A program made the translations under genes and the position numbers. The notes under the pieces were generated by a model, which did not search any database, was not told the origin of the DNA, and saw only the letters and a list, made by a program, of their open reading frames with translations. From the sequence record MZ501268.1: DNA of 64,000 bases; one strand, 5' to 3'. Shown here piece after piece: positions 423-46,476 of this stretch; within the stretch, counting starts at the first letter, position 1, and each line of letters opens with the position of its first letter.

Positions 423-458
423 AAAAAAATTACAGTTCTATATTACCTGAGTGTATAG
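423..458 (+). promoter_or_regulatory. phiKZ-type early (vRNAP) promoter for chimallin
   Basis: TATATTAC at 439-446 matches the phiKZ early promoter core. It has an upstream AAAATTACAG and a downstream GTGTATA, like the other copies in this window. Confidence 0.75.
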
Positions 459-10044: not shown

Positions 10045-10072
10045 AAGGGACTTCGGTCCCTTTATTTTTTTT
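10045..10072 (+). terminator. Intrinsic terminator
   Basis: AAGGGAC-TTCG-GTCCCTT followed by a T tract. Confidence 0.85.
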
Positions 10073-12670: not shown

Positions 12671-12701
12671 GAGCTCACCTTTGTGGTGGGCTCTTTTTTT
12701 T
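12671..12701 (+). terminator. Intrinsic terminator
   Basis: GAGCTCACC-TTTGT-GGTGGGCTC followed by a T tract. Confidence 0.85.
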
Positions 12702-12759
12702 GTCTTCTTTTTTTTTGTTCAGGGATTATATGTAGTCCATGTACACCTAAGAGGACATT

Positions 12760-34540: not shown

Positions 34541-34595
34541 CGGCATATAGGTCCTCCATTACGGAGGACCTTTTATGACACTTCTTTTTTTTTTT
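34541..34595. terminator. Bidirectional terminator
   Basis: CGGCATAT-AGGTCCTCC..GGAGGACCT-TTTATGAC plus a long T tract, between convergent genes. Confidence 0.75.
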
Positions 34596-34974: not shown

Positions 34975-35052
34975 GTGTGTATTTCCACTAATAAAAGGGA
35001 AGTTAAGAAAAGCAACCTGAGGAGTTATTCCATTGACTCCTCATAATGTATA

Positions 35053-35521
35053 CTACATGGATTCTATTTGCTTTTGAAGTTGCTTCAGTTGTTTGGCGTT
35101 ATCTGGCATCTCTGCATCAAAATCACGCAATGCTTCGATCATTGACTTACGCCTACAATAAGTATACTTCATCCATTTATCAAATGACAAACCGTATTTT
35201 TCAAGAATACCCGCACGCAGGTACTCCATCTCATATTTTCGCAACCCAACTAATGCCAACGGATCTTCTTGTTCCGTTTGTAAGATTAACGACAGCGGCG
35301 ACGGTTCCGTATTGTGATCAATGATCCCGTACGTATCATCGTAAAGCTCTGTTAATCGAATTAGTGGGTACTCCCAGTTCCCGGTGAGAAACTTAGGATC
35401 CTCTAATGCGACGTCCCATGCATCAGACCGGTCATCTGGGCTCAGGCCGAAGTCATAATGGATTAGATGTCGGCTTGCTCGAACGTCTGATTCAACGTAT
35501 TCGTCATTAGGGTAAAAAAAA
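35053..35521 (-). CDS. Start-less -1 frame extension of the 35463-37106 gene (gpT-like portion)
   Basis: The frame is open from the U8 tract (35521-35514) to TAA at 35053, with no ATG/GTG/TTG until TTG 35259. It encodes ...YLRAGILEKYGLSFDKWMKYTYCRRKSMIEAL. Confidence 0.65.
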
Positions 35522-37106
35522 CCCGACCGACGTTCAGCGGCGTATAGGCTGGGAACATCTTACTGATCAGCGGTTGTTTTTTACCACAGTGCGGACAAGT
35601 CCAGCGAGGGACAGCGACCACACCAATGGTTACGCGGTTGATGAACTCGTTCAGCTTTTCAAAGAACGGCTTACGCATTTCTTCTTTTGCACTGAACTGC
35701 TTCAGCAGCATTGCGATATCATCGCCTGAATCAACAAAGCTGCCGTCTTCAAACTCGATGCGCGTGATCCAGTGTGCGTAACCACGCATAGAGGACAGGG
35801 CCGCTTGTTTGTTGATGTGCTGCTCACGCTGCTCACGGGTCATGCTGTCATTGAACGAGTCAGTGATCGCTTGCTGAATGCCATTGATCCAGGCGTAACC
35901 TGCCAGGTTCTTATCTTCCAGCGATGGCACACGCAGGTAGAACTTCACCGCACCCACTTCGATGACGTTGTCTTTCATCACTTCAAACGCCGCTTGATAA
36001 GCCAGCACTTGTTCGACGGTACGTCCACTGAAGTTACTCATGTGTGAACGCTGTGTTGCAGACAGGCGTGAGTTATCAATGATCATCAGGCGAGAGATGT
36101 TCACTTTAGCTGCTTCAACATGAACACAGGTCTTCGGATCAGCAGCACAGGCCGTTACCAGGTTGTAACCTGATTTGAAGCGCGCACCCAAGTAGGCGTT
36201 AGCGATCAGATCCAGATCCTGTTCTTTGATCAGCGGCAGCAGGGTTTTCTTATCAGATACCCCAAGTGAGCTGTCAGTCACCATTCCCAGCAGGAAGTCG
36301 GACATGTGTTTACGCACAACCACATCGAGGTTGTTAAACACCATGCCATTGGTACGACGACCGAGTACACCCTTCTCAGCCATGATCCCGGTCTGCATGT
36401 CGACGAATTCATCATCGCCAGCTACCAGCATGGTTAACCAGATACCAGAGTGGGGTAAAGGAATGTGGATGTAGTCACCCATGTTCATGACCGCACGTGC
36501 ACGCATCACAGCCTGCGGGCCTGTCAGCAACTTAGTACCTTCGCTACTGGTCTTCACCGGTGGACGTGACACACCCTGCACTTTATCGCCGAGCAGAATA
36601 CCCTGCAACCATTGCGCACCATCTTGACGAATGGTCAGGTTGATACCCGCACGGTATGACAGGTTGTTGATGGCGTTGCTTGCCAGGGAGAGCCAGAGCA
36701 GTGCACGTTCCGCACCGTACAGACTGATGATCTCTTTCAAGATCTTCTTGTCATCGGTGTTGCTGTCGATCTCATTGATCAGCGCAGCAAAGGCGTCGAA
36801 CTCTTCATGCACGATAGACATGACATCACCGCCACCCATCGCTTCGATGCTTTTCAGCTTCTCGATGAATGGGTCTTTATAAAGCGCATCGATTGGTTGC
36901 TCAACCGCGTCTTCCTCTTCTGCTGGTTGTTCTTCAGCAGGATCAGCAGGAGTCTCGGGATCAGTACCTGCCGGCGGCGTTTCTTTGACTGGTGTTGGTG
37001 CAGGAACAGCAGCGCGACCTTTGGATGGATCGACTTCAGGAATAGCGCTGTGTGCGTTATCGTCTTCAGTGGCCACATTAGCAACAGTTGGGTTCTCGTT
37101 GGACAT
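35463..37106 (-). CDS. Putative tail/baseplate assembly chaperone-like protein with Zn finger (T4 gp26/gp51-like pattern)
   Basis: 547 aa; acidic N-tail, internal Cys cluster, C-terminal CPHC and ...VFF at a slippery site. Confidence 0.6.
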   Translation of the reverse strand: MSNENPTVANVATEDDNAHSAIPEVDPSKGRAAVPAPTPVKETPPAGTDPETPADPAEEQPAEEEDAVEQPIDALYKDPFIEKLKSIEAMGGGDVMSIVHEEFDAFAALINEIDSNTDDKKILKEIISLYGAERALLWLSLASNAINNLSYRAGINLTIRQDGAQWLQGILLGDKVQGVSRPPVKTSSEGTKLLTGPQAVMRARAVMNMGDYIHIPLPHSGIWLTMLVAGDDEFVDMQTGIMAEKGVLGRRTNGMVFNNLDVVVRKHMSDFLLGMVTDSSLGVSDKKTLLPLIKEQDLDLIANAYLGARFKSGYNLVTACAADPKTCVHVEAAKVNISRLMIIDNSRLSATQRSHMSNFSGRTVEQVLAYQAAFEVMKDNVIEVGAVKFYLRVPSLEDKNLAGYAWINGIQQAITDSFNDSMTREQREQHINKQAALSSMRGYAHWITRIEFEDGSFVDSGDDIAMLLKQFSAKEEMRKPFFEKLNEFINRVTIGVVAVPRWTCPHCGKKQPLISKMFPAYTPLNVGRVFFTLMTNTLNQTFEQADI

Positions 37107-37123
37107 TATGTTTTATCCTTACC

Positions 37124-37591
37124 TTACTCTTTTGTTGGATCGACCTGAACTGGGTCATTGACGGTGTTCTTGGCAGCGGTAGCAACAGCATTTGCGTGAG
37201 CACTGTCAGACATCGCGAGAATAGCGGCCCCGTGGAAAGCCATGGCATCGAGCAATTTGCTCTGCAAGATAACGTACTGCTCATTCACGCCCAGGAAGTC
37301 AGCGATGCAATCATCTTTCATTGCAAACCCGGTCTTGCCTTCGTGTTGTGCTTGAATGGCTGGGAGTTGTTTATCGAACTCTTCGACAATGGCGAGTGCT
37401 GCTTCCAGGTGTTGGTTCAGCGCCGGCACGTTTGGTTGGAAGCGAACGATGTTGGTGTTAACAGCCAGCAAACAAGTGTTTGACAGCTCGTTGCGCAAAT
37501 TAATCGTATAACTTGCGACAGAATTCAGGTATTCCCAGAACTGGTCCGGTTGATGGACCTCCGGGGCCAGAGGCGGCTTGGTGTTTGACAT
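37124..37591 (-). CDS. Helical hypothetical protein
   Basis: Start moved to ATG 37591 (AGGA SD). Confidence 0.7.
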   Translation of the reverse strand: MSNTKPPLAPEVHQPDQFWEYLNSVASYTINLRNELSNTCLLAVNTNIVRFQPNVPALNQHLEAALAIVEEFDKQLPAIQAQHEGKTGFAMKDDCIADFLGVNEQYVILQSKLLDAMAFHGAAILAMSDSAHANAVATAAKNTVNDPVQVDPTKE

Positions 37592-37684: not shown

Positions 37685-38596
37685 ATGAGTGAACTGACTG
37701 ACTTAACGAAACTGCAGGTTGATTTACCCCAGAACATCAATCGGGTTGATGAAAACGATGACGTGGGTGACTTCAGCGATTTGAATGATTACCTCATGAC
37801 AATCATCCCGGATATCCGTCGTGAGAAACTGATTTCCATTTGCCAGAACTTAGCCGCGTTACAATACCATCAAGTGCAGCCAGATGTTGATCGCTTGATG
37901 ATGATGGCTAACGAAGGGGAAGCCCCGTCTGTTGTGGATGACTTAACCCGGTTGTTATTTGAACACGCTTATGATCTGACCAAGAACATGGGCTTTAACT
38001 GGGCTGATGATATCGAGTTCCCACAGCTGCTGTTATTAGGTGATGTCATTGAAGGCGCCATGCTGATTGACGGGATGGAAGACTACGGTGATTTAACCGC
38101 AATCCTTGATGGCGATGATTCGGTAGAAGAGAAGGTTGTGGACATCTGGACCTTGGTGCTGGATAAAGACATGCACCATCTCTTTGACTTCATTGAGTCT
38201 ATCGAGCCCGCAGTGATCACAGGTATCAAGCAGGTCACCACACGCCCGTATGCGGCAGATGAGTACGAAGATGTCCAACGCCCGTTAGACTTCGTGGTGC
38301 AGCGTCTGGTTGCGTATCGACCCCACATGAAAGAAGACGGGATTGCTTACCAACACGTCGTACTGGGTGGCGCACTGGGCGTTGATTTGGAATCACTGAT
38401 CACCTTATATACTCCACAGTTGAATGAGGTCACTGATCACATCGAGTTGGCTGATCTGCTGTTGGCCTTTACCTTGATCAGTAATACCCCAGACGGGCTG
38501 GTGAAGTCAGAAGCCATGAAGCTTGCAGAAAAATGGATTGATGATATTGAGTTCATCAATATGGTTGGGACTCACATCGATAAGGCGCCTGTGTGA
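37685..38596 (+). CDS. Acidic protein, probably virion-associated (phiKZ gp79-like)
   Basis: 303 aa, coupled to the vRNAP subunit; synteny. Confidence 0.65.
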   Translation: MSELTDLTKLQVDLPQNINRVDENDDVGDFSDLNDYLMTIIPDIRREKLISICQNLAALQYHQVQPDVDRLMMMANEGEAPSVVDDLTRLLFEHAYDLTKNMGFNWADDIEFPQLLLLGDVIEGAMLIDGMEDYGDLTAILDGDDSVEEKVVDIWTLVLDKDMHHLFDFIESIEPAVITGIKQVTTRPYAADEYEDVQRPLDFVVQRLVAYRPHMKEDGIAYQHVVLGGALGVDLESLITLYTPQLNEVTDHIELADLLLAFTLISNTPDGLVKSEAMKLAEKWIDDIEFINMVGTHIDKAPV

Positions 38597-39903
38597 ATAT
38601 TCGTGATTATTTAATCATGGCCTTTAGGGCCGGGGCGTACAAGCAACGCCAATGGGTATTGAGTGTCATGAGTATCACCACGACTCCTGATGGGAAGTCC
38701 GTGGCAGACTCTATGATCCCTTACCAGGTTCACCGCATTGCCCAAGGTAGTGTCGTTGAGTGGTGCTACTGGGATGATTTTAATAAGACCTTTGTCCCAA
38801 TAGAAGGCGTGGATGTAAACTTCCCTCTGGTGCGTCCCGAGGATGAGTTTGCATTACACCCCGGAGACTTCGCCAATGTCGTGGAAGAAATTGTTACTAC
38901 TTTCGGTCGTATCCTGGCTAATCACTATTATTTTATTGATGTGGTTGGTGAACGTATTCCTTTCCAGAACGTAGAGTTCAACCGGGGAATGCTGGAGAAG
39001 ATCTACAAGGCTCGTGTGCTGGAAGATCCACAAGACTTGCGTCGCTCTGATCCGTTCTACATTACGGTAGAAGAGTTCAAGCGGTCTGTGGACAACGGCT
39101 ATGCGCTGGGTGGTCTGTCTAAACTCTGTGTGCCGACAGCTTGTCCAGAAACCATGTATCCGCCGAAGTTTATCATCGAGATGCGTGACCGTCTGTTTGA
39201 AGAACATAAAGACGAGCTCAACAACCCGGTGGTGATGGGGCGTATTCAGGATGAGTTGCTAAAGCACTACCGTGACTTCCTGATGTCGACGCCTTCTGCG
39301 AAGTTCTTCGTGATTAAGAAGACCATCGACCAGGCCTTCAACAACATGTTCCTGACCGGTGGTATCGCAGGCGCCTTTGGCGGCAACACAGTCATCACCA
39401 ACTCGCTGTATGAAGGCTGGAACCTGAAGAACTTCCCGGCATTAGTAAACGGCTCGATAGAAGCATCATTTGACCGCGGGGCTGCAACAGCGGACGGTGG
39501 TGAGAAAGTGAAGATGCTGATCCGTGCCACACAGAACATCCGTATCACTGATGATGACTGTGGAGCGAAGATTGGTGTGCCGTGGGTAATCGAGTCAGTC
39601 GGTAAAGAACGTTTCATCAATTCCTACGTCTTGGTGAAAGGTGAATCGATTCTGCTGACCCCAGAGAACATCGACAGCTTTGTTGGCAAGCCACTGATGG
39701 CCCGCTCACCGAACTTCTGTAAGAAATCACACGGTGACTCTTGCAGGTTCTGCGCCGGCGCACACAACGCCACTAACCCACGCGGGATGTCTTCCGGTAC
39801 CTCTAAGATCGGTTCTACTCTGATGTTGTTATCGATGAAAGCAATGCATAAAGGGTCAAAGATAGACTTAATCGAATACAGCATTGACGAGGTCTTCAAT
39901 TAA
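38593..39903 (+). CDS. Virion RNA polymerase beta' subunit fragment (phiKZ gp80-like)
   Basis: RGAATADGG, DDDCG and RSPNFC..SCRFC match beta' bridge-helix and Zn-site motifs. Confidence 0.85.
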   Translation: MNIRDYLIMAFRAGAYKQRQWVLSVMSITTTPDGKSVADSMIPYQVHRIAQGSVVEWCYWDDFNKTFVPIEGVDVNFPLVRPEDEFALHPGDFANVVEEIVTTFGRILANHYYFIDVVGERIPFQNVEFNRGMLEKIYKARVLEDPQDLRRSDPFYITVEEFKRSVDNGYALGGLSKLCVPTACPETMYPPKFIIEMRDRLFEEHKDELNNPVVMGRIQDELLKHYRDFLMSTPSAKFFVIKKTIDQAFNNMFLTGGIAGAFGGNTVITNSLYEGWNLKNFPALVNGSIEASFDRGAATADGGEKVKMLIRATQNIRITDDDCGAKIGVPWVIESVGKERFINSYVLVKGESILLTPENIDSFVGKPLMARSPNFCKKSHGDSCRFCAGAHNATNPRGMSSGTSKIGSTLMLLSMKAMHKGSKIDLIEYSIDEVFN

Positions 39904-46422: not shown

Positions 46423-46476
46423 CCGCATAAGGAGAGGGCATTTGCCCTCTCCTGTTTATGCCGTCTTTTTTTTTTT
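46423..46476. terminator. Mirror-symmetric bidirectional terminator
   Basis: CCGCATAA-GGAGAGGGCA-TT-TGCCCTCTCC-TGTTTATGCCG plus a T tract, between convergent genes. Confidence 0.85.

What the first reader, a model, noticed from the sequence alone, without database searches (positions are those of the whole stretch)
35053..35560. Candidate programmed -1 ribosomal frameshift (lambda G/GT-like) in a jumbo phage chaperone-like gene
Seen in sequence: on the minus strand the 547-aa gene reads CGG GTT TTT TTT ACC (R-V-F-F-T; U8 at 35521-35514), 16 codons before its stop. The -1 frame from there is open for 153 codons (YPNDEYVESDVRASRHLIHYDFG...LEKYGLSFDKWMKYTYCRRKSMIEAL...) with no ATG/GTG/TTG until 35259, and it is closed upstream by a TAA about 14 codons before the tract. 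U UUU UUU fits the X XXY YYZ slippery rule and predicts a ~684-aa fusion. Established: tail assembly chaperones of long-tailed phages use such frameshifts. Inference: this is the unrecognized, genomically displaced tail chaperone pair of this phage group. I do not know of a description in phiKZ-like phages.
Basis: partly seen in the sequence, partly recalled or inferred. Interest (0 to 1): 0.82.

Follow-up and report, generated by a model that had tools for sequence, protein, structure and literature searches.

The report
Conserved frameshift in jumbo-phage core gene
A core gene of the nucleus-forming (phiKZ-like) jumbo phages is read in two frames at a conserved run of U over two Phe codons. 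It yields a 547-aa protein and a form about 684 aa long, which genome annotations currently split into two unrelated "hypothetical" genes.

Summary
The window is Erwinia phage AH06. On the minus strand, gene AH06_284 (547 aa) carries GTT TTT TTT ACC sixteen codons before its stop. From that point the -1 frame is open for 153 codons with no usable start.

The layout is not a sequencing error. It recurs in every relative examined (about 66 readable loci: isolates from phiKZ, 201phi2-1, SPN3US, Goslar and PCH45 to Vibrio phages at 17-20% identity, plus IMG/VR, JGI and Logan metagenome contigs). Each has an in-phase U-rich site on an invariant Phe-Phe, a short 0-frame tail and a 151-181 codon -1 ORF encoding a conserved domain. 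None is fused, and none of 148 further 50%-identity cluster representatives has the extension.

Programmed -1 ribosomal frameshifting is the best explanation. Transcriptional slippage is the main rival, weakened by lineages with only five or six U.

The "lambda G/GT tail chaperone" reading is only partly supported. The protein is not a tail assembly chaperone by sequence, size or gene position. Its predicted fold does resemble T4 gp26/gp51 baseplate-hub assembly proteins, though sequence profiles do not confirm that.

I found no published description. I rate it a new member of a known kind.

The parts
35463..37106 (-). 0-frame ORF, AH06_284 (547 aa, stop included). Homologue of phiKZ gp77, 201phi2-1 gp136, SPN3US gp39 and Goslar gp081.
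36627..37106 (-). N-terminal region of about 160 residues, acidic and Pro-rich, predicted disordered and poorly conserved.
   Evidence: AF2 pLDDT below 50 for residues 1-127 and 139-160; alignment A1
35463..36626 (-). Conserved globular core (residues about 161-547), confidently modelled. Its fold resembles T4 gp26/gp51-type proteins (PF12322).
36126..36149 (-). Cys320 and Cys327, first half of a putative four-Cys metal site. Invariant in the 10-phage alignment.
35586..35597 (-). Cys504-x2-Cys507 (CPxC), second half of the putative metal site. Invariant in the 10-phage alignment.
35514..35521 (-). T8 tract. The in-phase slippery heptamer U UUU UUU occupies 35520-35514 over the invariant Phe530-Phe531.
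35560..35562 (-). TAA that closes the -1 frame upstream, the 5' limit of the shift window.
35466..35513 (-). 16-codon 0-frame tail, which overlaps the first 16 codons of the -1 reading. It is part of a predicted C-terminal helix. Tail length is conserved, mostly 13-16 codons across the family.
35053..35514 (-). -1 frame reading after the heptamer: 153 codons plus TAG. It encodes a conserved domain of unknown fold.
35053..35259 (-). AH06_283 as annotated (68 aa from a TTG). This is a truncated call of the -1 ORF that omits most of the conserved domain.
37124..37591 (-). Upstream co-oriented neighbour AH06_285 (phiKZ gp78 homologue). It is syntenic with the recoded gene across the family.
37685..39903 (+). 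Divergent neighbours AH06_286 (phiKZ gp79-like head protein) and AH06_287 (virion RNA polymerase beta' subunit). This is context that argues against a tail-gene module.

Best explanation
AH06_284 and the start-less ORF behind it form one recoded gene.

Most ribosomes read the 0 frame and terminate 16 codons after the Phe-Phe pair, giving a 547-aa protein. A fraction slip back one nucleotide while tRNA-Phe occupies the UUU UUU codons of the U UUU UUU heptamer. Those ribosomes continue in the -1 frame for 153 codons, giving a form of about 684 aa with the same core and a different, larger C-terminal domain. The site therefore fixes a ratio between a short and a long isoform.

Shown here: the site, its codon phase, the absence of an independent start, and family-wide conservation of both the 0-frame tail and the -1 domain.

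Inferred: that the shift is ribosomal; that its efficiency is modest, because the AH06 clade has no stimulatory RNA structure; and that the protein is a non-virion assembly factor related in fold to T4 gp26/gp51 (baseplate-hub assembly), with the added domain changing what it binds.
For: 1. Anatomy in the window is as described.

2. Conservation. Of 59 readable loci (10 isolates and 49 IMG/VR contigs), 51 carry a codon-aligned U UUU UUY, 5 carry G UUU UUU and 3 carry G UUU UUC. All have a -1 ORF of 151-181 codons and a 0-frame tail of 8-44 codons, mostly 13-16. Four more relatives of the AH06 clade and three further isolates (phiEaH2 and two Vibrio phages, the latter at 17-20% identity) show the same layout.

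3. No fused forms. A HMMER profile search of 1.84 billion cluster representatives gave 1674 hits. Among the 148 new representatives in the top 150, lengths are 403-645 aa and the match ends at the C-terminus. 142 of the 148 end 7-34 residues after FF.

4. No independent start. 42 of 52 unique loci have no ATG, GTG or TTG in the -1 frame from its upstream stop to 22 codons past the site, and no candidate has a Shine-Dalgarno-like motif. In four relatives the -1 frame is closed only 1-2 codons before the heptamer, and in 201phi2-1 the 0 frame stops 8 codons after it. The shift window therefore essentially contains only the U tract.

5. The -1 ORF encodes a real domain, with conserved motifs across 34 diverse loci.

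6. Ribosomal rather than transcriptional. 13 of 52 unique loci have only T5-T6, yet all keep at least the in-phase U UUY tetramer (motif rules from PMC4066793). One metagenomic clade has a 10-bp hairpin starting 7 nt after the heptamer, with 2 compensatory pairs.

7. Fold. Foldseek against BFVD matches T4-like baseplate hub assembly proteins at E 1.8e-6 to 1e-3, TM (target-normalised) 0.47-0.57.
Against: There is no direct protein evidence. The RAY and Deimos-Minion lysate mass-spectrometry table does not list gp266 or gp267.

No stimulatory structure is predicted in the AH06 clade, where the 50 nt after the site are less structured than almost any other window of the gene.

U_UUU_UUU is a weaker shifter than A_AAA_AAG in E. 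coli (PMC5009743).

T7-T9 tracts, present in 39 of 52 loci, could also support RNA-polymerase slippage.

The functional assignment rests on predicted-structure similarity only. Pfam, NCBIfam, PHROGs and hhalign give no significant link to PF12322. The model of the -1 domain is poor (pLDDT 50). The Churi homologue is reported as early-expressed.
Confidence: 0.7

Rival explanations
1. Transcriptional slippage. The phage (or host) RNA polymerase stutters on the T tract, so a fraction of mRNAs carry a U run of altered length that puts the downstream domain in register. The ribosome then reads normally.
For: AH06 has T8, and 39 of 52 unique loci have T7-T9. Homopolymeric U and A heptamers are known slippage-prone sequences (PMC4066793 and PMC5009743). 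The lack of a stimulatory RNA structure in most clades fits this mechanism. These phages use their own divergent multisubunit RNA polymerases, encoded by neighbouring genes.
Against: 13 of 52 loci have only T5-T6, including three with G UUU UUC, which is shorter than tracts known to slip efficiently. The feature common to all loci is the codon phase of UUU UUY, not tract length. One clade has a correctly spaced hairpin typical of ribosomal frameshift stimulators.
Confidence: 0.2
2. Two separate genes. The downstream ORF is translated on its own from a non-canonical start or by termination-reinitiation after the 0-frame stop.
For: Database annotators treat it as a separate gene, using CTG in Ea35-70, an upstream TTG in RAY, and internal ATG or TTG starts in Special G and AH06.
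Against: No start codon is conserved, and 42 of 52 loci have none in the relevant stretch. No Shine-Dalgarno-like motif is present. Protein conservation in the -1 frame begins at the heptamer, and the nearly invariant H..FG motif lies at or just after the 0-frame stop. The annotated starts disagree with one another and cut off conserved residues.
Confidence: 0.06
3. Artefact or decay: a homopolymer sequencing error, or a recently broken gene in AH06.
For: Homopolymer runs are classic sites of sequencing error.
Against: The same layout appears in independently sequenced isolates from Canada, the USA, the UK, Korea, Egypt, New Zealand and Viet Nam, among other places, and in dozens of metagenome assemblies. 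No fused ORF is seen anywhere. Both reading frames are under protein-level conservation.
Confidence: 0.01

Closest known systems
Lambda G/GT-type tail assembly chaperone frameshift (also P2 E/E', Mu gp41/42)
   Same: A -1 shift near the 3' end of a phage morphogenesis-type gene. It produces a short form and a C-terminally extended form in a ratio set by the site, often without a strong stimulatory structure.
   Different: There is no sequence or fold relationship to TAC families. The protein is about four times larger. The heptamer is U UUU UUY rather than G GGA AAG. The gene is not located between tail tube and tape measure. The short form has its own conserved tail that the extension replaces.
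T4 gp26 / gp51 (Pfam PF12322 T4_baseplate; NCBI name 'gp26 family baseplate hub assembly chaperone')
   Same: The predicted fold of the core matches BFVD models of this family. Both families carry conserved Cys including a CPxC. T4 has a core-only paralogue (gp26) and a paralogue with an extra C-terminal domain (gp51). That is formally parallel to the short and long products here.
   Different: No significant sequence or profile similarity: hhalign probability is 9-47% over 12 columns, and there is no Pfam hit in 61 members. The jumbo-phage protein is twice as long. T4 uses two genes, plus an internal start in gene 26, and no frameshift. The -1 domain shows no similarity to the gp51 C-terminus.
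E. coli dnaX tau/gamma and IS-element -1 frameshifts
   Same: A homopolymer-type X XXY YYZ heptamer is decoded by a single tRNA species in both sites, and two products come from one gene.
   Different: Those use A AAA AAG with strong stimulators (an upstream SD-like element and a downstream hairpin). In dnaX the shift truncates the protein rather than extending it.
Transcriptional slippage recoding (IS elements, Thermus dnaX, endosymbiont genes)
   Same: A homopolymeric A or T tract lies at the frame junction.
   Different: Tracts here can be as short as five U and are held in a fixed codon phase.

Membership tests
Programmed -1 ribosomal frameshift (X_XXY_YYZ / Z_ZZN type) | Slippery heptamer or tetramer in the correct phase of the 0 frame | tested here: met
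   U UUU UUU at 35520-35514 over Phe530-Phe531. Across 52 unique loci there are 44 with U UUU UUY and 8 with G UUU UUY, all containing an in-phase U_UUY tetramer.
Programmed -1 ribosomal frameshift (X_XXY_YYZ / Z_ZZN type) | Overlapping -1 ORF with no initiation signal of its own, closed shortly upstream | tested here: met
Programmed -1 ribosomal frameshift (X_XXY_YYZ / Z_ZZN type) | Site and trans-frame ORF conserved in divergent relatives, with no fused forms | tested here: met
   About 66 readable loci and 148 further cluster representatives.
Programmed -1 ribosomal frameshift (X_XXY_YYZ / Z_ZZN type) | Stimulatory element (downstream hairpin or pseudoknot, or upstream SD-like sequence) | tested here: inconclusive
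   None in the AH06 clade. One metagenomic clade has a 10-bp hairpin 7 nt downstream with 2 compensatory pairs. Such an element is not obligatory; from my own knowledge, lambda G/GT lacks one.
Programmed -1 ribosomal frameshift (X_XXY_YYZ / Z_ZZN type) | Trans-frame protein product observed | not testable with these tools
   The only proteomic table read (RAY and Deimos-Minion lysates) does not list either ORF.
Tail assembly chaperone G/GT family | Sequence or fold homology to known TAC families | tested here: not met
   No Pfam, PHROG, NCBIfam or PDB hit. TAC-annotated BFVD models match only at E of 0.9 or worse.
Tail assembly chaperone G/GT family | Gene lies between the tail tube and tape measure genes | tested here: not met
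   The neighbours are gp78-like, gp79-like head protein, a virion RNAP beta' subunit and small ORFs, in all phages inspected.
Tail assembly chaperone G/GT family | Small short form (about 100-150 aa) with an extension of similar size | tested here: not met
   The short form is 547 aa and the extension is a net 137 aa.
T4 gp26/gp51 baseplate hub assembly family (PF12322) | Match to the family HMM above its threshold | tested here: not met
   No PF12322 hit at E up to 5 in 10 + 51 family members. T4 gp26 and gp51 themselves hit at 1e-52 to 1e-64.
T4 gp26/gp51 baseplate hub assembly family (PF12322) | Profile-profile similarity | tested here: inconclusive
   hhalign probability is 9-47%, and only the CPxC stretch aligns.
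T4 gp26/gp51 baseplate hub assembly family (PF12322) | Shared fold | tested here: met
   Foldseek against BFVD gives probability 1.00, E 1.8e-6 to 1e-3 and TM (target) 0.47-0.57 to several 'baseplate hub assembly protein, T4-like' models. Both sides are predicted models, and PDB holds no member.
T4 gp26/gp51 baseplate hub assembly family (PF12322) | Non-virion assembly factor encoded with the hub genes | tested here: inconclusive
   201phi2-1 gp136 carries no virion mass-spectrometry flag, although its neighbours do. It is not mentioned in the Goslar virion structure paper. The gene is not next to recognisable hub genes, and the Churi homologue is listed as early-expressed.
Transcriptional slippage site | Homopolymer long enough for efficient polymerase slippage (about 7-9 or more) | tested here: inconclusive
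   Met in AH06 (T8) and in 39 of 52 loci. Not met in 13 of 52 (T5-T6).

The most novel reading that the evidence does not exclude
An ancient recoding signal, universal in the nucleus-forming jumbo phages and their metagenomic relatives (over 1000 protein clusters at 50% identity), makes one gene do what T4 does with two paralogues, gp26 (core only) and gp51 (core plus C-terminal domain). It would be a baseplate-hub counterpart of the G/GT rule, in which a fixed short-to-long ratio of an assembly factor is set by tRNA-Phe slippage without a stimulatory RNA structure.
Probability: 0.25. Interest if true: 0.8.

Novelty: new member of a known kind. Interest (0 to 1): 0.68.

Why it matters
The gene is a core gene of a heavily studied phage family (phiKZ, 201phi2-1, PhiPA3, Goslar, SPN3US, RAY), and its function is unknown.

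If the two ORFs are one recoded gene, hundreds of genome annotations carry a wrongly started or truncated "hypothetical protein". Proteomic searches that rely on those annotations cannot see the long isoform, and knock-down or transposon data for the two ORFs need to be read together.

It would add a deeply conserved, structure-independent U UUU UUY frameshift to the short list of phage recoding events outside tail assembly chaperones. It also gives a concrete handle, two isoforms in a fixed ratio, on a protein whose predicted fold points to the poorly understood T4 gp26/gp51 hub-assembly factors.

Tried and rejected
Sequencing error or a fused ORF in relatives: rejected.

Independent start or reinitiation: no conserved start and no SD-like motif.

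A universal downstream stimulatory structure: not found. The median MFE percentile of the 50 nt after the site is 0.72 relative to the rest of the gene, and the AH06 clade gives no consensus structure. Rfam has no relevant hit; the only match, snoU61 at E 0.51, is far below its gathering score.

Named families for either piece: Pfam, PHROGs (only unknown-function families 4585, 8054, 13274 and 12109), NCBIfam, and PDB by sequence and by profile all gave nothing. Foldseek of the core against PDB gave nothing.

Structure of the -1 domain: the AF2 model is poor (pLDDT 50) and its Foldseek search was uninformative.

Similarity of the -1 domain to the gp51 C-terminal domain or to the core itself: none.

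Literature: ten full-text searches and several papers read turned up no description of a frameshift in this gene. Subscription-only papers are outside that library.

Disclosure of a slip: I fetched the phage T4 record with an accession recalled from memory rather than one shown by a tool or paper. A follow-up paper search pairing that accession with 'gp51' found no paper. The tool's own record header identified it as Escherichia phage T4. The two pieces were always handled separately.
Full report
**Identity of the window.** The region is 100% identical to Erwinia phage AH06 (MZ501268.1, genus Agricanvirus, 275 kb, host Erwinia billingiae). On the minus strand, the 547-aa ORF 37106..35463 is AH06_284, annotated "baseplate protein". 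The next annotated gene, AH06_283, is a 68-aa call starting at a TTG at 35259.

**Checking the observation.**
- The minus strand reads CGG GTT TTT TTT ACC, with T8 at 35521-35514, and the 0 frame stops 16 codons later.
- The -1 frame is closed by a TAA at 35562-35560, 13 codons upstream of the heptamer.
- It is then open for 153 codons to 35053, with no ATG, GTG or TTG before 35259.

I treat the tract as a recoding signal of an intact gene in a viable lytic phage, not as a lesion. No sequence joining the two frames was built at any point. The two pieces were always searched separately.

**Is it an error or an accident? No.**
- *Close relatives.* The sixteen other matching records, all from the Ea35-70 group (about 80% nucleotide identity, sequenced by other laboratories), keep T8, the 16-codon tail and the -1 ORF.
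- *Moderately distant relatives.* Salmonella phage SA002, Erwinia phage pEa_SNUABM_37 and Proteus phage 10 share only 44-50% identity in the downstream piece. They keep U UUU UUU in the same phase, and their homology to the AH06 -1 piece starts at its first residue.
- *The whole family.* The upstream protein is the homologue of phiKZ gp77, 201phi2-1 gp136, SPN3US gp39, Goslar gp081 and a PCH45 protein, and tblastn finds it in 224 phage records. All of these loci have a T7-T8 run over an invariant Phe-Phe and a long open -1 frame.
- *Metagenome contigs.* A scan of IMG/VR returned 50 more loci.
- *Tally.* Of 59 readable loci, 51 have a codon-aligned U UUU UUY, five have G UUU UUU and three (Noxifer-like) have G UUU UUC. 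In every one the -1 frame is open for 151-181 codons, while the +1 frame usually closes within a dozen codons.
- *Additional loci.* Four more relatives of the AH06 clade from JGI and Logan assemblies, plus phiEaH2 and two Vibrio phages (the latter at 17-20% protein identity), behave the same way. The 686-aa length of the phiEaH2 protein comes from an N-terminal extension, not a fusion.
- *Protein-level survey.* A HMMER profile search of 1.84 billion cluster representatives found 1674 family members, 1127 of them at E of 1e-30 or better. Among the 148 new representatives in the top 150, lengths are 403-645 aa, the match always runs to the C-terminus, and 142 end 7-34 residues after FF, most often 13-16.
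- *Outcome.* No fused form was seen anywhere.

**Why the downstream ORF is not a gene of its own.**
- In 42 of 52 unique junctions there is no ATG, GTG or TTG in the -1 frame between its upstream stop and 22 codons past the site. The few candidates that exist lack a Shine-Dalgarno-like motif.
- Annotators have chosen incompatible starts: CTG in Ea35-70, an upstream TTG overlapping gp267 by 136 nt in RAY, and internal starts in Special G and AH06.
- The -1 pieces of 34 diverse loci align into a conserved domain. A nearly invariant Phe within an H..FG motif lies about 22 residues after the shift, and further motifs follow downstream. Internal starts would delete these.
- The shift window is very narrow. 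In four relatives the -1 frame is closed 1-2 codons before the heptamer, and in 201phi2-1 the 0 frame ends 8 codons after it.

**Mechanism.** The feature common to all loci is not tract length (T5 in 3, T6 in 10, T7 in 14, T8 in 21, T9 in 4) but the in-phase UUU UUY pair. That pair always provides at least the U_UUY tetramer and usually the full heptamer. Both are accepted -1 frameshift motifs in bacteria (PMC4066793). This favours slippage of tRNA-Phe on the ribosome.

Polymerase slippage remains a real alternative for the T7-T9 tracts, but it fits the T5-T6 lineages poorly.

A stimulatory structure is not general. In AH06 and many other clades the 50 nt after the site are among the least structured windows of the gene, and the AH06 clade has no consensus fold. 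One metagenomic clade does have a 10-bp hairpin beginning 7 nt after the heptamer. Two of its pairs show compensatory changes, and the 0-frame stop lies inside its 3' arm.

U_UUU_UUU is a modest shifter in E. coli (PMC5009743), so I expect the long form to be the minor product. That is inference.

**What the protein is.**
- Neither piece matches a named family in Pfam, NCBIfam or PDB by sequence or profile. PHROGs places them only in unknown-function families.
- AlphaFold2 with an 18-sequence alignment gives a disordered N-terminal region of about 160 residues and a confident core (pLDDT 70-94 over most of residues 210-540). The Phe-Phe pair and the 0-frame tail sit inside a C-terminal helix.
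- Four cysteines are invariant in the ten-phage alignment (C320, C327, C504, C507; the last two form a CPxC), which suggests a metal site.
- Foldseek finds nothing in PDB.
- In BFVD, after the protein's own family, Foldseek matches several 250-310-aa models named "baseplate hub assembly protein, bacteriophage T4-like", "baseplate hub assembly chaperone" or "baseplate hub subunit" (E 1.8e-6 to 1e-3, target-normalised TM 0.47-0.57).
- T4 gp26 and gp51 both belong to Pfam PF12322 and phrog_150 and are paralogues of each other (hhalign 97%). gp51-type proteins carry an extra C-terminal domain.
- Profile-profile comparison between the jumbo-phage family and deep gp26/gp51 alignments is not significant. 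Probability is 9-47%, and only the CPxC stretch aligns.
- The relationship is therefore a fold-level lead, not an established membership. The AH06 label "baseplate protein" may reflect the same weak link.

**Context.**
- The gene is syntenic with a gp78-like gene and lies divergent from a gp79-like head-protein gene and a virion RNA polymerase beta' subunit gene, not with tail genes.
- 201phi2-1 gp136 carries no virion mass-spectrometry flag, although its neighbours do.
- The Goslar virion structure paper does not mention the homologue.
- The Churi homologue of phiKZ gp077 is listed among early-expressed proteins (PMC11849849).
- These facts fit a non-virion factor. They do not specifically support a tail chaperone.

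**Comparison with known systems.** In logic this works like lambda G/GT: a 3'-proximal -1 shift giving a short and a C-terminally extended form in a ratio set by the site. It is not a member of that family by homology, size or gene position. The closest protein relatives by fold are T4 gp26/gp51. The formal parallel with T4's core-only and core-plus-domain paralogues is suggestive but untested, and the -1 domain shows no similarity to the gp51 C-terminus.

**Literature.** Ten full-text searches and the papers read yielded no description of recoding in this gene. These included the 2016 review of frameshifting and slippage (the first 300,000 of its 449,034 characters, which is all the library holds), the core-genome paper on nucleus-forming phages, the RAY family paper, and the Goslar and SPN3US papers. 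Subscription-only literature could not be searched, so prior description cannot be excluded.

**Verdict.** Programmed -1 ribosomal frameshifting is the best explanation (0.7), with transcriptional slippage as the rival (0.2). The tail-assembly-chaperone identification is not supported as membership. A T4 gp26/gp51-like assembly role is plausible at about 0.4. I class this as a new member of a known kind, of clear practical value for annotating and studying the phiKZ-like phages.

Noticed in passing
window 35053-35259; L002 4344-4739; L003 4479-4739; L087 2985-3533: The same downstream ORF is annotated with four incompatible starts in closely related phages: TTG (68 aa) in AH06, CTG in Ea35-70, a short internal start in Special G, and an upstream TTG overlapping the previous gene by 136 nt in RAY (protein record version 2).
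   Followed up: yes
window 35463-35513 and the equivalent region in L002, L004, L005, L062-L065 (alignment A8): About 15 nt around the 0-frame stop are almost invariant at the nucleotide level between phages whose proteins are only about 40% identical. This is presumably double coding constraint from the 0-frame tail end and the -1 frame motif. No RNA structure explains it.
   Followed up: partly
window 35461-35510 and the equivalent region in about 20 of 52 loci: The 50 nt following the heptamer are less structured than 96-100% of other 50-nt windows of the same gene in AH06 and many other clades. This is the opposite of what a stimulatory hairpin would give, and it is unexplained.
   Followed up: partly
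L028, L030, L031, L032, L034, L038 (alignment A7): One metagenomic clade has a 10-bp hairpin starting 7 nt after the heptamer. The 0-frame stop codon lies inside its 3' arm, and two outer pairs show compensatory changes.
   Followed up: partly
window 34975-35052 (minus strand); L002 4740-4814: Directly after the -1 ORF stop there is an 8-bp hairpin (not significant against shuffles) followed by a T-rich stretch. That stretch is nearly identical in AH06 and Ea35-70 and lies upstream of the next gene, so it may be a terminator and/or a phage promoter.
   Followed up: partly
window 10065-10072, 12694-12701, 12708-12716, 34585-34595, 46466-46476 (+ strand), 423-429 (- strand): These are other T7-T11 runs in the window, 20 overlapping T7 matches against 11 expected. 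Their positions relative to genes were not checked, except that 34585-34595 lies just outside AH06_282.
   Followed up: no
L066 5803-7229 (phage T4 genes 26 and 51): T4 gp26 and gp51 are clear paralogues (hhalign 97%, both in PF12322) with four invariant Cys positions including a CxxC. gp51-type proteins carry an additional C-terminal domain (precomputed Pfam PF28602).
   Followed up: partly
proteins P0025, P0147, P0148, P0152, P0160, P0166: Six of 148 family representatives lack the Phe-Phe pair and have F-L, F-I or F-S instead. Their DNA could not be fetched, so it is unknown whether they use another slippery motif or lack the -1 ORF. P0025 seems to end at the site.
   Followed up: no
window 36627-37106: The N-terminal region of about 160 residues is acidic, Pro-rich, predicted disordered, and highly variable in length across the family (SPN3US and phiEaH2 have more than 100 extra residues).
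   Followed up: partly
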